A stretch of DNA of 49,712 bases. Source: Octopus bimaculoides (Eukaryota). A model generated the notes under the pieces. That model ran no database searches, was not told the origin of the DNA, and saw only the letters and a list, made by a program, of their open reading frames with translations. Positions 19,075-23,094 of the stretch are shown in pieces; positions within the stretch are counted from its first letter, which is position 1; each line of letters opens with the position of its first letter. A program made the position numbers and the translations under genes. The stretch is from positions 21,589,125-21,638,836 of the forward strand of contig NC_068991.1 of the NCBI RefSeq assembly GCF_001194135.2, in the 5' to 3' direction.

Positions 19075-19248
19075 CCACTAGAGTTGGAAATATCAATGTA
19101 CCGACAAGCCTCAGCAACAGACTCACTAAAGTTGATCTTCACCCAACACACAAAATTAAACAGTACCCAGCAGGAACAAACCAGCTGGATAAACCTAGAG
19201 CTTTACCTGTCACCAAACCACACCAAAGTGGTTTCAGTACCATTATTG
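19075..19248 (+). CDS. Exon 4: MNNL/C2 C-terminal strands
   Basis: aaag| acceptor, TTG|gtaagt donor, phase 0 to 0, 174 nt: PLELEISMYRQASATDSLKLIFTQHTKLNSTQQEQTSWINLELYLSPNHTKVVSVPLL. The pattern parallels Delta GTFSLIIEA...LISRL..QRHL...EW. Confidence 0.7.
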
Positions 19249-21878: not shown

Positions 21879-22011
21879 CTTCTATGGAGTTGTGCAAATT
21901 ATTTCTATGGTACCAACTGCAGTACATTCTGTGATGCAACAAAGCACCAGCTGTTCTCTTGTGATAAGGCAGGAAATAAAGTCTGTCAACTTGGCACTGT
22001 AAATGAATACT
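21879..22011 (+). CDS. Exon 5: DSL domain
   Basis: tgtag| acceptor, T|gtaagt donor. LLWSCANYFYGTNCSTFCDATKHQLFSCDKAGNKVCQLGTVNEY(C) matches the DSL pattern C-x3-[YF]YG-x2-C-x2-FC...CD-x2-G-x-K-x-C-x2-G-x5-C. Confidence 0.9.
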
Positions 22012-22610
22012 GTAAGTACCATTTCTACTACAGCTACTGTTTTGGACTTAAATCCTTCATCAGAAAAAAATGAAAGCAAAGAAGAAAGGGTGAGATTGTA
22101 GGAGATAAAAATCTCAGTAAAAGAGGGAAGTTTATGCTATATATGGACCTACTTCAGCATCGCTTTCAAGATGGCACTAGAATAATTTAACTTATGGATT
22201 TCACCTCTCCTTTCTTCCTTCTAGTTTTCTCTAATTCTCTTTCCTTTTCTCTATTCCTGTCTTTATTTTCTGATGGAAGACTGAAGCTTGAAATAGTATG
22301 TAACATTTCTATATCTTCTTCATGCATTAAAAATAAAAGAATACTTCTTTTCAAATGTTAGCACAAGGCCAGCAATTCTGAGGGAGAGGGTTAGTCAATT
22401 ACATCAACCCAAATACTTGACTGGCACTTCATTTTATTGGTCCTAAAGAGAGGAAAAGATTTGAACAGGGAGTGTAAAGAGGTGGAAGAAATGCAGATGA
22501 ATATCTTTTTTTTTTTTTTGATGTGTTAATAATTCTGTAAACTTGCTGCCTAAATAATAACAACAACAACGACAACAACAACAACGACAACAATAATAAT
22601 AATAATAATA

Positions 22611-23094
22611 GTCAAGACGAAGAGCGCGATTCGATTGTATAAATGTTTTATTCTGAATCTACCCCACTTTCACTTCTCAGAATGTATGAGGAGAAATATG
22701 TTTNNNNNNNNNNNNNNNNNNNNNNNNNNNNNNNNNNNNNNNNNNNNNNNNNNNNNNNNNNNNNNNNNNNNNNNNNNNNNNNNNNNNNNNNNNNNNNNNN
22801 NNNNNNNNNNNNNNNNNNNNNNNNNNNNNNNNNNNNNNNNNNNNNNNNNNNNNNNNNNNNNNNNNNNNNNNNNNNNNNNNNNNNNNNNNNNNNNNNNNNN
22901 NNNNNNNNNNNNNNNNNNNNNNNNNNNNNNNNNNNNNNNNNNNNNNNNNNNNNNNNNNNNNNNNNNNNNNNNNNNNNNNNNNNNNNNNNNNNNNNNNNNN
23001 NNNNNNNNNNNNNNNNNNNNNNNNNNNNNNNNNNNCGAAATATTGTTCAACGAATAAAACATTTATACAATCGAATCACGCTCTTCGTCTTGAC
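22611..23094. mobile_element. TIR element (MITE-like), interior mostly in assembly gap
   Basis: 42-bp inverted repeats 22611-22652 and 23053-23094 (41/42 identical), with TA on both outer sides. Confidence 0.7.

What the first reader, a model, noticed from the sequence alone, without database searches (positions are those of the whole stretch)
21879..22011. DSL domain has lost most of the canonical Notch-contact face
Seen: C2-C3-C4 region STFC-DATKHQLFS-CD, a 9-residue loop, with GTVNEY in place of GWxGxY. Established: canonical ligands have FC-RPRDDxFGHYx-C (11 residues), and in human JAG1 F199, R201, R203, D205 and F207 form the conserved Notch-interacting surface (numbering recalled, not recomputed). 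Here only the Phe is kept, with R to D, R to T, D to H, and the loop is 2 residues shorter. All six cysteines and the YG, CD, GNK motifs remain, so the fold looks maintained while the interface is rewired. Inference: a different binding partner, or weak/inhibitory Notch binding.
Basis: partly seen in the sequence, partly recalled or inferred. Interest (0 to 1): 0.72.

Follow-up and report, generated by a model that had tools for sequence, protein, structure and literature searches.

The report
Divergent DSL domain, cephalopod Delta-like gene
The stretch is a real exon encoding a Delta/Serrate-type (DSL) domain that keeps its disulphide scaffold but has lost nearly every residue that canonical ligands use to grip Notch. 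It belongs to a large, badly annotated, lineage-specific Delta-like membrane protein, so it is an unusual variant of a known kind, not a new kind of system.

Summary
Window 21879-22011 (+) is exon 4 of a gene with at least 10 exons. It translates to LLWSCANYFYGTNCSTFCDATKHQLFSCDKAGNKVCQLGTVNEY and hits Pfam DSL above threshold (34.7 bits against 75 for human JAG1). Of 20 columns conserved in canonical DSL domains it keeps 10: six Cys, one Tyr (the other is Y to F) and three Gly. It has lost the whole RPRDDxFGH loop, which is 9 residues instead of 11, and the GWxG Trp.

One correction: the sixth Cys codon is split (T|GT) across the exon boundary. It is probably completed by a 69-nt linker exon at 34847-34915.

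The gene encodes a signal peptide, a fast-evolving N-terminal module not recognisable as MNNL, the DSL, a linker with an RVRR furin-type motif, and ordinary (non-DOS) EGF repeats that run off the window. A spliced mRNA from another species shows the same architecture with about 22 EGFs, a transmembrane helix and a short tail. It has the same 9-residue loop and also lacks the Trp, so the gene is not a pseudogene.

A canonical Delta exists separately in octopus. The protein is most likely a non-canonical DSL protein, either a modulator of Notch or one with a different partner, but no function was tested. Divergent Delta-like genes are already known in lophotrochozoans.

The parts
13355..13628 (+). 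Exon 1: start codon(s), signal peptide (MKMRLQSVFMHFFFLSFISFQFVLTFG) and first part of the N-terminal Cys-containing module; ends in phase 1
   Evidence: Colinear tblastn match to orthologue P0001 aa 14-85 with 4/4 Cys conserved and the CxVQRxFxFL motif. Donor AATG|gtaaga.
14203..14315 (+). Exon 2: N-terminal module (EYQNISP...IHLLIPGPIQ), phase 1 to 0
   Evidence: 100% match to the annotated fragment P0254. Acceptor tttccag|, donor CAG|gtaaga. Same intron positions and phase in genomic contig L002 of a related species.
19075..19248 (+). Exon 3: rest of the N-terminal module (PLELEISMYRQ...VVSVPLL), phase 0 to 0
   Evidence: 96.7% tblastn match to P0254; the two mismatches are the flanking residues outside the exon. 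Splice sites aaaag| and TTG|gtaagt.
21879..22011 (+). Exon 4: the DSL domain of the finding (Cys1-Cys5 plus the first base of the Cys6 codon), phase 0 to 1
34847..34915 (+). Exon 5 (predicted, not confirmed by transcript): completes Cys6 (T|GT) and encodes the linker PSPEIQESSIARVRRQSDSSPK with an R-V-R-R furin-type motif; phase 1 to 1
   Evidence: Best of 30 phase-compatible AG|GY...GT candidates in the 16-kb intron: 80% pyrimidine tract plus cag acceptor and gtaaga donor. IARVRR aligns with GIRRIRR of the orthologue's linker. It is the only RX[KR]R in the protein.
38159..38287 (+). Exon 6: EGF1 (PPDPCHSAPCKNGASC...LCDY), tandem NAGNAG acceptor, phase 1 to 1
   Evidence: 65% identity to P0001 EGF1; Pfam EGF; splice sites.
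40470..40583 (+). Exon 7: EGF2 (GIDDCINNTC...LCET)
   Evidence: 60.5% identity to P0001 aa 300-337; splice sites.
42177..42526 (+). Exon 8: EGF3-5 (calcium-binding type, O-Glc and O-Fuc consensus sites)
   Evidence: 58% identity to P0001 aa 337-454, E=1.6e-45.
47800..48023 (+). Exon 9: EGF6-7
   Evidence: Colinear with P0001 aa 455-529.
48752..49072 (+). Exon 10: EGF8-10. The donor at 49073 shows the gene continues beyond the window end.
   Evidence: Colinear with P0001/L001 aa 530-634.

Best explanation
The finding is exon 4 of an intact, multi-exon, plus-strand gene for a lineage-specific (cephalopod or mollusc) divergent member of the DSL protein family.

Architecture. The parts seen in the window are: a signal peptide; a rapidly evolving, beta-rich N-terminal module with four conserved Cys; a DSL domain; a short linker with a conserved R-x-R-R site; and a long array of ordinary, largely calcium-binding EGF repeats. 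About 22 EGFs, a single transmembrane helix and a 27-residue tail are seen only in the orthologue.

The DSL keeps what is needed to fold: three consecutive disulphides, YxG, GxK and the strand Gly. It has replaced the whole C3-C4 loop that forms the JAG1 F199/R201/R203/D205/F207 Notch-EGF11 face, and also the GWxG Trp. The protein lacks the DOS-type EGF1-2 and a recognisable MNNL/C2 domain.

Inference. It does not engage Notch through the canonical MNNL-DSL/EGF11-12 interface and is not the animal's activating ligand; a canonical Delta is encoded elsewhere. It most likely acts either as a non-activating modulator of Notch (DLL3-like cis-attenuator or decoy) or as a cell-surface or shed protein with a different partner. 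The fast-evolving head is presented on, or possibly cleaved from, a rigid EGF stalk.

Shown: exon and gene structure, domain identity, loss of consensus residues, conservation of the scaffold and of the short loop in an expressed orthologue.
Inferred: everything about binding and function.
For: Gene model. Ten exons, all with AG/GTRAG splice sites and consistent phases, give an uninterrupted 633-aa ORF.

DSL identity. Pfam 34.7 bits against a cut-off of 24.2. The top PDB hits are the DSL domains of JAG1 and DLL1 (E 0.005-0.01); JAG2, DLL4 and Serrate follow more weakly. AF2 gives pLDDT 77.5 for the window DSL and 81-87 for the orthologue's DSL, and the top 21 Foldseek hits are all ligand DSL domains.

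Divergence.
- The window DSL keeps 10 of 20 canonical conserved columns, and only 4 of the 14 non-Cys ones.
- Pfam DSL bit scores: JAG1 75.4, octopus Delta 69.1, Platynereis Delta-like 48.7, octopus paralogue 44.2, orthologue 38.2, window 34.7.
- A non-aromatic residue at the Trp position was seen in only 9 of 215 DSL-like modules.

Not a pseudogene.
- The orthologue L001/P0001 is a spliced mRNA, 45% identical and colinear over the N-terminus, the DSL and 10 EGFs. It has the same 8,3,9,7,8 Cys spacing and also no Trp.
- Genomic contig L002 shares the intron position of exon 2.
- dN is 0.83 for the N-terminal module, 0.57 for the DSL and 0.33 for the EGFs. Rough dN/dS is 0.13-0.38, with dS saturated.

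Other canonical features missing.
- No DOS motif and no Pfam EGF_DL_JAG or JAG1-like_EGF2 hit, while control Deltas are positive.
- No MNNL hit at E<=1, against 130 bits for octopus Delta.
- No VWC in the full-length orthologue.
- A canonical Delta is present in Octopus sinensis (P0090).

Literature. The conserved JAG1 face is needed for trans-activation and cis-inhibition (PMC3415683). DSL contacts EGF11 and MNNL contacts EGF12 (PMC6202052). DLL3 is a precedent for a divergent DSL protein that does not trans-activate (PMC4391858).
Against: - No binding or signalling data of any kind exist.
- C. elegans DSL ligands lack the DOS motif and still activate LIN-12/GLP-1 (PMC2504490). A filarial nematode Delta-like protein (P0112) has also lost the RPRDD consensus. 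Sequence divergence alone therefore does not exclude Notch activation, especially if the receptor co-evolved.
- The N-terminal module aligns positionally with MNNL (GxFELxL-like start, the FFRxCL and PCxFG Cys pair), so a C2-like lipid- and Notch-binding head may persist. AF2 (pLDDT <50) and hhalign (probability 0.7%) could not decide.
- Exon 5, and hence Cys6 and the RVRR motif, is predicted rather than transcript-verified in this species. The intron holds 10 N-gaps that could hide another exon.
- No orthologue was found among annotated Octopus proteins, so expression in this species is unproven.
- The transmembrane helix and tail are known only from the orthologue.
Confidence: 0.55

Rival explanations
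1. It is still a genuine activating Notch ligand. The DSL-Notch interface has been rewired and co-evolved, as in nematode DSL-only ligands, possibly working with a separate DOS-type co-ligand or a particular Notch-like receptor.
For: - The DSL fold, the N-terminal module in the MNNL position and a type-I membrane topology are retained.
- C. elegans LAG-2 and APX-1 lack DOS yet activate Notch.
- A filarial Delta-like protein (P0112) has lost RPRDD.
- Purifying selection acts on the whole protein.
Against: - It has also lost GH and the Trp, which nematode and cestode ligands keep.
- The N-terminal module is not detectable as MNNL.
- The orthologue's 27-residue tail carries lysines only in the juxtamembrane stop-transfer stretch (read directly from the sequence). 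By my own recollection of the known motifs it has no obvious Neuralized or Mib docking motif; this was not tested.
- A furin-type site between the head and the stalk would uncouple the head from the endocytic pulling force.
- A canonical Delta already exists in octopus.
Confidence: 0.22
2. It is specifically a DLL3-like cis-inhibitor: it binds Notch only in the same cell or in the secretory pathway and attenuates signalling.
For: DLL3 is the known precedent for a degenerate DSL without DOS that fails to trans-activate but cis-inhibits.
Against: - In JAG1 the same DSL face mediates cis-inhibition as well as trans-activation, and that face is gone here.
- The architecture (about 22 EGFs against 6 in DLL3) and the lineage are unrelated to DLL3.
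- No localisation data exist.
Confidence: 0.12
3. It is a decaying pseudogene, or an assembly or annotation artefact, and the divergence is neutral drift.
For: - Only a 133-aa fragment is annotated (P0254).
- No annotated orthologue was found in other Octopus proteomes.
- The assembly is 15.6% N.
- Cys6 depends on a predicted exon.
Against: - Ten exons have perfect splice signals and phases and no stop codon over 633 codons.
- All 6 Cys of each of the 10 EGFs and of the DSL are intact.
- The orthologue is an expressed, spliced mRNA with the same peculiarities.
- dN/dS is well below 1 in the EGFs.
Confidence: 0.04
4. It is not a DSL domain at all but a chance or aberrant EGF-like Cys-rich module.
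For: The Pfam score is only about half that of canonical DSLs. Weak secondary hits to Teneurin-type EGF models appear for the orthologue.
Against: - DSL is the only Pfam hit for the exon and it is above the gathering score.
- All PDB sequence hits and the top 21 structural hits are ligand DSL domains.
- The domain sits exactly between an N-terminal module and an EGF array, as in all DSL ligands.
Confidence: 0.02

Closest known systems
Canonical Delta/Serrate/Jagged ligands (human JAG1, DLL1, DLL4; Octopus sinensis delta-like protein D, P0090)
   Same: - Signal peptide, an N-terminal module, one DSL with identical Cys spacing except in one loop, an EGF array, and (in the orthologue) a single transmembrane helix.
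- The predicted DSL fold superposes on JAG1, DLL1 and Serrate (TM 0.6-0.74).
   Different: - The C3-C4 loop is 9 residues rather than 11, and RPRDDxFGH is entirely replaced.
- The GWxG Trp is replaced by Thr.
- There are no DOS-type EGF1-2.
- The N-terminus is not recognisable as MNNL.
- About 22 ordinary or calcium-binding EGFs without a Jagged VWC region.
- A furin-type site follows the DSL.
- The cytoplasmic tail is very short.
Vertebrate DLL3
   Same: A DSL-family protein with a degenerate DSL and no DOS motif that co-exists with canonical ligands. It is the best functional analogy for loss of trans-activation.
   Different: It is unrelated by descent (an amniote paralogue). It has 6 EGFs against about 22. 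DLL3 keeps a recognisable MNNL. No evidence here bears on cis-inhibition.
Octopus sinensis 'protein jagged-1b-like' XP_036362565.1 (P0284) and the O. vulgaris homologue (P0295)
   Same: - Closest named relative: 42% identity from the DSL through the EGFs.
- The DSL also lacks RPRDD, GH and Trp (DNPTSEQTRFQ; GFTGPF).
- The same DPC[HR]SAPCKN EGF1 follows the DSL directly, with the same '[YE]GIDDC' junction.
- No Pfam MNNL hit.
   Different: - It is a paralogue, not an orthologue.
- It has an 11-residue loop, no linker and no R-x-R-R site.
- It has about 7 EGFs and ends in a Cys-rich module that looks to me like a chitin-binding domain (Pfam gave no such hit at E<=1) instead of a long stalk.
Lophotrochozoan 'Delta-like' and 'DSL-like' genes (e.g. 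Platynereis delta-like transmembrane protein 3, P0294; PMC5356439, PMC8166818)
   Same: Lineage-specific extra DSL+EGF genes of uncertain origin, fast-evolving, with modified C3-C4 loops and no DOS.
   Different: Those described keep MNNL (52 bits in P0294) and the GW motif and usually have fewer than 7 EGFs. This one is longer and more degenerate.
C. elegans DSL-only ligands (LAG-2, APX-1, DSL-1) with separate DOS co-ligands (OSM-11)
   Same: DSL without DOS. OSM-11 and DOS-3 are the precedent for a proprotein-convertase site in transmembrane Notch co-ligand precursors (PMC2504490).
   Different: The nematode proteins are short (1-2 EGFs) and are proven activators. No DOS-only partner was looked for here.

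Membership tests
DSL domain (Pfam PF01414) | Score above the curated gathering threshold of the family model | tested here: met
   34.7 bits against a cut-off of 24.2, E=2.2e-8, profile positions 1-43 of 46. 32.0 bits in the context of the spliced protein.
DSL domain (Pfam PF01414) | Six cysteines with spacing C-8-C-3-C-(~11)-C-7-C-8-C | tested here: met
   The spacing is 8,3,9,7,8, so only loop 3 is shortened. The Cys6 codon is split T|GT across the exon 4/5 junction, and the exon that supplies it is predicted.
DSL domain (Pfam PF01414) | DSL fold with consecutive disulphides | tested here: inconclusive
   The AF2 model has pLDDT 77.5. Its top 21 Foldseek hits are all ligand DSL domains, with TM 0.59-0.74 and rmsd 2.4-3.6 A. 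However, the input alignment consisted of canonical DSLs, and the disulphide pattern was not inspected.
Canonical activating DSL ligands (Delta/Serrate/Jagged) | Conserved Notch-binding face of the DSL (JAG1 F199, R201, R203, D205, F207) | tested here: not met
   Only the F199 equivalent is kept. R201 is D, R203 is T, D205 is H, and F207 is deleted or replaced.
Canonical activating DSL ligands (Delta/Serrate/Jagged) | N-terminal MNNL / C2 domain | tested here: inconclusive
   No Pfam MNNL hit at E<=10 or E<=1, and hhalign probability 0.7%. AF2 gives pLDDT <50 but predicts beta strands. MAFFT places the module and two of its Cys in register with MNNL.
Canonical activating DSL ligands (Delta/Serrate/Jagged) | DOS-type atypical EGF1-2 immediately after the DSL | tested here: not met
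   The published DOS regex is negative for the window, the orthologue and the paralogue, and positive in four control Deltas. There are no EGF_DL_JAG or JAG1-like_EGF2 Pfam hits above threshold. Note that DLL4 and nematode ligands also lack DOS.
Canonical activating DSL ligands (Delta/Serrate/Jagged) | EGF array, transmembrane helix and intracellular domain with E3-ligase (Mib/Neur) docking | not testable with these tools
   The EGF array is present. The transmembrane helix and the 27-aa tail are seen only in orthologue L001. The window ends before them, and no motif library for Mib/Neur docking is available.
Canonical activating DSL ligands (Delta/Serrate/Jagged) | Binds Notch EGF11-12 and trans-activates | not testable with these tools
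   This needs binding or reporter assays, or complex modelling.
Jagged/Serrate subfamily | At least 16 EGFs plus a VWC / Cys-rich region | tested here: not met
   The orthologue has about 22 EGFs but no VWC or other extra domain in Pfam. The 'jagged-1b-like' label of the paralogue is automatic naming.
DLL3-like non-activating ligands | Cis-interaction with Notch without trans-activation; intracellular localisation | not testable with these tools
   Only the sequence analogy of a degenerate DSL without DOS is available.

The most novel reading that the evidence does not exclude
The N-terminal module plus DSL 'head' is a fast-evolving recognition unit that has left the Notch system. It is cut from its roughly 22-EGF membrane stalk at the conserved R-x-R-R site by a furin-type convertase. 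It then acts as a shed factor, or as a non-covalently held head, with a non-Notch partner. That would make this a cephalopod or mollusc invention built from Delta parts.
Probability: 0.13. Interest if true: 0.65.

Novelty: new variant of a known kind. Interest (0 to 1): 0.4.

Why it matters
The gene is a natural experiment on what the DSL scaffold can do once freed from Notch. The fold is kept under purifying selection, while the whole receptor-contact loop, the Trp, the DOS EGFs and the MNNL signature have been replaced. A canonical Delta persists alongside it.

If the protein still binds Notch, it would define an alternative interface. If it does not, it would be a clean case of a Notch-ligand module taking on a new partner in a lineage known for nervous-system and developmental novelties.

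Practically, the gene is represented in databases only by a 133-residue fragment. Surveys of cephalopod Notch components that require MNNL plus DSL will miss it.

Tried and rejected
1. Two large protein searches with the DSL+EGF concatenate and with a window/orthologue profile were swamped by EGF-repeat proteins such as Notch, fibropellin, crumbs and SNED1. The tool also filters hits to roughly 0.5-1.75 times the query length. They yielded only P0001.

2. A third search with the N-terminus plus DSL found only the annotated fragment P0254.

3. Pairwise dN/dS against L001 is limited by saturated dS, which is above 2 or undefined.

4. AF2 of the orthologue's residues 1-341 failed on the N-terminal module (pLDDT <50). 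The Foldseek hits of that model to DLL1, JAG1 and DLL4 have TM of only 0.16-0.23 and are not evidence for a C2 fold.

5. hhalign of the N-terminal module against MNNL was not significant.

7. The microsatellite-encoded 'NNNNDNNN...SQDEE' stretch at 22547-22624 was considered as the linker exon. It was rejected because it has no acceptor and is a simple repeat.

8. An alternative weak donor 33 nt downstream that would keep Cys6 in-exon was rejected in favour of the perfect GTAAGT (reasoning).

9. Direct splicing of exon 4 to exon 6 is phase-compatible but would replace Cys6 by Ser or Leu. It is kept as a minor possibility.

10. Look-ups of genomic loci for P0254 and P0284 found nothing. The run accession of L001 is in no paper held, so the orthologue's species is unknown.
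Full report
**What is at the coordinates**

Window 21879-22011 on the plus strand translates to LLWSCANYFYGTNCSTFCDATKHQLFSCDKAGNKVCQLGTVNEY. It is preceded by an AG at 21877-78 and followed by a perfect GTAAGT donor, so it is an exon. It ends in phase 1 with a lone T.

Pfam's DSL model is the only family hit, at E=2.2e-8 and 34.7 bits against a gathering cut-off of 24.2. A phmmer search of all PDB sequences returns only DSL-ligand chains. JAG1 and DLL1 score E 0.005-0.01; JAG2, DLL4 and Serrate follow at E 0.05-0.8. The Cys pattern occurs nowhere else in six frames except in a (TG)n artefact, and 50 shuffles give 0.02 occurrences on average.

**How divergent the domain is**

Cys spacing is 8,3,9,7,8. 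It is 8,3,11,7,8 in 12 of the 14 other DSL domains I tabulated, which include human JAG1, octopus Delta, abalone and scallop Jagged-like, fly Delta and vertebrate DLL1/DLL4.

In an alignment with 15 canonical domains, 20 columns are at least 70% conserved.
- The window keeps 10 of them: the six Cys, one Tyr of YYG, and three Gly.
- It loses P, R, D, D, F, G and H of the C3-C4 loop, and W and G of GWxG. One further change is Y to F.

Only the F199 equivalent survives. HMMER puts the two-residue deletion at F206-F207.

Pfam DSL bit scores give a scale:

| Protein | Bits |
|---|---|
| Human JAG1 | 75.4 |
| Octopus sinensis Delta | 69.1 |
| Platynereis delta-like TM protein 3 | 48.7 |
| Octopus 'jagged-1b-like' paralogue | 44.2 |
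| Orthologue P0001 | 38.2 |
| Window | 34.7 |

Among 215 DSL-like modules in the proteins retrieved, short loops of 7-9 residues are common (80 of 215, mostly in multi-DSL proteins). A non-aromatic residue at the Trp position is rare (9 of 215).

**One correction to the observation**

The sixth cysteine is not in the exon. The next coding exon with an EGF (38159-38287) is phase-compatible, but direct splicing would give Ser or Leu instead of Cys.

I scanned the 16-kb intron for phase-1 exons that begin AG|GY. Of 30 candidates, one stands out at 34847-34915. It has an 80% pyrimidine tract plus a cag acceptor and a gtaaga donor. Its peptide is C-PSPEIQESSIARVRRQSDSSPK. The IARVRR stretch aligns with GIRRIRR in the orthologue's linker. 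I treat this as a probable exon 5. It is not transcript-verified, and ten N-gaps in the intron could hide alternatives.

**The gene**

With that exon, ten exons give an uninterrupted 633-codon ORF that runs off the 3' end of the window. All have AG acceptors and GTAAG/GTAAT donors, and their phases are consistent. The exons are:

| Exon | Coordinates |
|---|---|
| 1 | 13355-13628 |
| 2 | 14203-14315 |
| 3 | 19075-19248 |
| 4 | 21879-22011 |
| 5 | 34847-34915 |
| 6 | 38159-38287 |
| 7 | 40470-40583 |
| 8 | 42177-42526 |
| 9 | 47800-48023 |
| 10 | 48752-49072 |

The product has, in order: a signal peptide; an N-terminal module of about 160 residues with four Cys; the DSL; a 27-residue linker; and ten EGF repeats. 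The EGFs carry five calcium-binding motifs, five O-glucose consensus sites and seven O-fucose consensus sites.

The only database record of this gene is a 133-residue UniParc fragment, P0254. It matches exons 2 and 4 exactly and exon 3 apart from the two flanking residues. It starts at an internal Met and stops at the DSL exon.

**Relatives**

*Orthologue.* The best relative is P0001, encoded on a 3.9-kb Logan contig, L001, from run SRR29271480. After one frameshift in a T-run is repaired, it encodes 1193 residues. These comprise a signal peptide, an N-terminal module, the DSL, an acidic linker ending in RIRR, about 22 EGFs, a transmembrane helix and a 27-residue tail.
- It is 45% identical to the window protein and colinear from the signal peptide through EGF10, including idiosyncratic junctions such as 'DYGIDDC'.
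- Its DSL has the same 8,3,9,7,8 spacing (CDSKENATYYC) and also lacks the Trp (GINGIF).

*Evidence that L001 is spliced mRNA.* Genomic contigs L002 and L003 from two other runs carry exon 2 of a gene 95% identical to L001. The match covers exactly 110 nt and is flanked by cag| and |gtaaga. This shows that L001 is spliced mRNA and that the intron positions and phase match the window's exon 2.

*Paralogue.* Octopus sinensis XP_036362565.1, labelled 'jagged-1b-like' (P0284), and an O. vulgaris homologue are paralogues. Identity is 42% from the DSL onward. Their DSL also lacks RPRDD, GH and Trp, and the same DPC[HR]SAPCKN EGF1 follows it.

*Canonical ligand.* O. sinensis also has a fully canonical Delta, P0090, with MNNL at 130 bits, DSL at 69 bits and a DOS motif. 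The divergent gene is therefore an addition to the standard ligand, not a replacement.

**Pseudogene test**

The intact ORF, the splice sites and the full complement of EGF and DSL cysteines argue against decay. So does an expressed orthologue sharing the odd features.

Against L001, dN is 0.83 for the N-terminal module, 0.57 for the DSL, 0.90 for the linker and 0.33 for the EGFs. dS is saturated, so dN/dS (about 0.13 for the EGFs and about 0.38 for the N-terminus) is only indicative. The head evolves about two to two-and-a-half times faster than the stalk.

**Fold**

AF2 on the window DSL, using an alignment of canonical DSLs, gives a mean pLDDT of 77.5. Its 21 best Foldseek matches in the PDB are all DSL domains of JAG1, DLL1, JAG2, DLL4, Serrate and Delta, with TM 0.59-0.74 and rmsd 2.4-3.6 A. 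The orthologue's DSL is modelled at pLDDT 81-87. The alignment biases the model towards the family fold, so I count this as moderate support for 'scaffold maintained'.

The N-terminal module could not be folded (pLDDT <50). It has no Pfam MNNL hit and is not significant in hhalign against MNNL. MAFFT does place it and two of its Cys in register with MNNL. Whether it is a C2 domain remains open.

**Other canonical features**

The published DOS consensus (PMC2504490) is absent from the window protein, the orthologue and the paralogue. It is present in four control Deltas. The Delta/Jagged-specific EGF models do not hit. The full-length orthologue has no VWC or other extra domain.

**Mechanism**

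In canonical ligands the DSL contacts Notch EGF11 and MNNL contacts EGF12 (PMC6202052). The conserved JAG1 face is needed both for trans-activation and for cis-inhibition (PMC3415683). This protein has lost that face, the Trp, the DOS EGFs and the MNNL signature, while a canonical Delta exists. I therefore think it most likely does not use the canonical interface and is not an activating ligand (about 0.55).

Within that view it could be a non-activating modulator, for which DLL3 is the precedent (PMC4391858), or it could have a different partner.

The main rival (about 0.22) is a rewired but still activating ligand. C. elegans DSL ligands lack DOS and still signal, and a filarial nematode Delta-like protein has also lost RPRDD.

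The pseudogene reading (about 0.04) and the 'not a DSL' reading (about 0.02) are largely excluded.

**A lead noticed on the way**

RX[KR]R occurs exactly once in the 633-residue window protein (RVRR) and once in the orthologue's ectodomain (RIRR). Both lie at the homologous position between the DSL and EGF1. That suggests convertase cleavage releasing or loosening the head. A convertase site in transmembrane precursors of the nematode DOS co-ligands is a precedent. The evidence rests on two sequences and one predicted exon.

**Comparison with what is known, and novelty**

Extra, fast-evolving 'Delta-like' or 'DSL-like' genes of uncertain origin are documented in lophotrochozoans (PMC5356439). 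PMC8166818 reports 138 DSL-family genes there, and that those combining DSL with EGF underwent 'rapid differentiation'. This gene is a more extreme and longer variant of that kind, so I rate it a new variant of a known kind. It is not categorically new.

Interest is moderate (0.4). It is a clean, testable case of a Notch-ligand scaffold stripped of its Notch-contact residues, but nothing about function is shown.

The species is not identified by any tool. The nearest named relatives are Octopus proteins.

Noticed in passing
window 34880-34891 (RVRR in predicted exon 5); L001 protein residues 255-258 (RIRR): There is a single furin-type R-x-[KR]-R motif in each ectodomain, at the homologous position between the DSL and EGF1. 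It is a candidate proprotein-convertase cleavage site separating the head from the EGF stalk.
   Followed up: partly
window 22011/22012 and 34846/34847: The codon for the sixth DSL cysteine is split T|GT across an exon junction. Direct splicing of exon 4 to the EGF1 exon would be in frame but would replace this Cys with Ser or Leu, so exon 5 skipping would produce an unpaired Cys5.
   Followed up: partly
window 38157-38161: The EGF1 exon has a tandem NAGNAG acceptor (tag|cag|). Either choice stays in frame, giving ...K-S-V-F-P-P-D or ...K-L-F-P-P-D.
   Followed up: no
window 14223-14315, 19075-19248, 21879-22010: The only database protein for this gene is a UniParc fragment of 133 aa (P0254). 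It starts at an internal Met of exon 2 and stops at the DSL exon, so the gene is badly under-annotated. No orthologue was found among annotated Octopus proteins.
   Followed up: yes
window 4932-6902 (+) and 32442-32975 (-): These are fragments of non-LTR retrotransposons. The upstream one has endonuclease (Exo_endo_phos_2) and RVT_1 pieces in different frames. The other is an Exo_endo_phos piece on the minus strand inside intron 4.
   Followed up: partly
window 28317-28451 (-), 29491-29625 (-), 37767-37925 (+); also 2465-2665 (-) and 30526-30700 (+): Dispersed repeat copies share near-identical ORF-like translations (KLHEALAGDGGEPCCTLPPQLSLTL... and PRADQSLVSGFGRQKLKEARRI...). They are probably interspersed (SINE-like) elements in the introns.
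   Followed up: no
whole window: The window has 20 runs of N totalling 7,776 nt (15.6%), and many (TG)n, (TA)n and (CA)n microsatellites. Ten of the gaps lie in the 16-kb interval between the DSL exon and the EGF1 exon and could hide exons.
   Followed up: partly
window exons 6-10 (38159-49072): The EGF stalk carries 5 O-glucose (C-x-S-x-P-C) consensus sites, 7 O-fucose (C-x4-[ST]-C) consensus sites and 5 calcium-binding EGF motifs. Its repeats therefore resemble those of Notch receptors and fibropellins more than the first EGFs of ligands.
   Followed up: no
L001 nt ~1900-1915: The orthologue's transcript contig has a one-base frameshift in a T-run (GTGTTTTTTGTC) that splits the ORF into 626-aa and 555-aa pieces. 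It is probably an assembly or sequencing error.
   Followed up: partly
proteins P0240, P0241, P0243-P0245, P0247, P0248, P0253: Proteins with 6-11 tandem DSL-like modules, many with short C3-C4 loops, turn up in Nematostella (labelled 'MEGF11', 'draper' and 'delta-like D') and in unnamed metagenome or transcriptome contigs. One module (CEEKENSTYVC) resembles the orthologue's loop.
   Followed up: no
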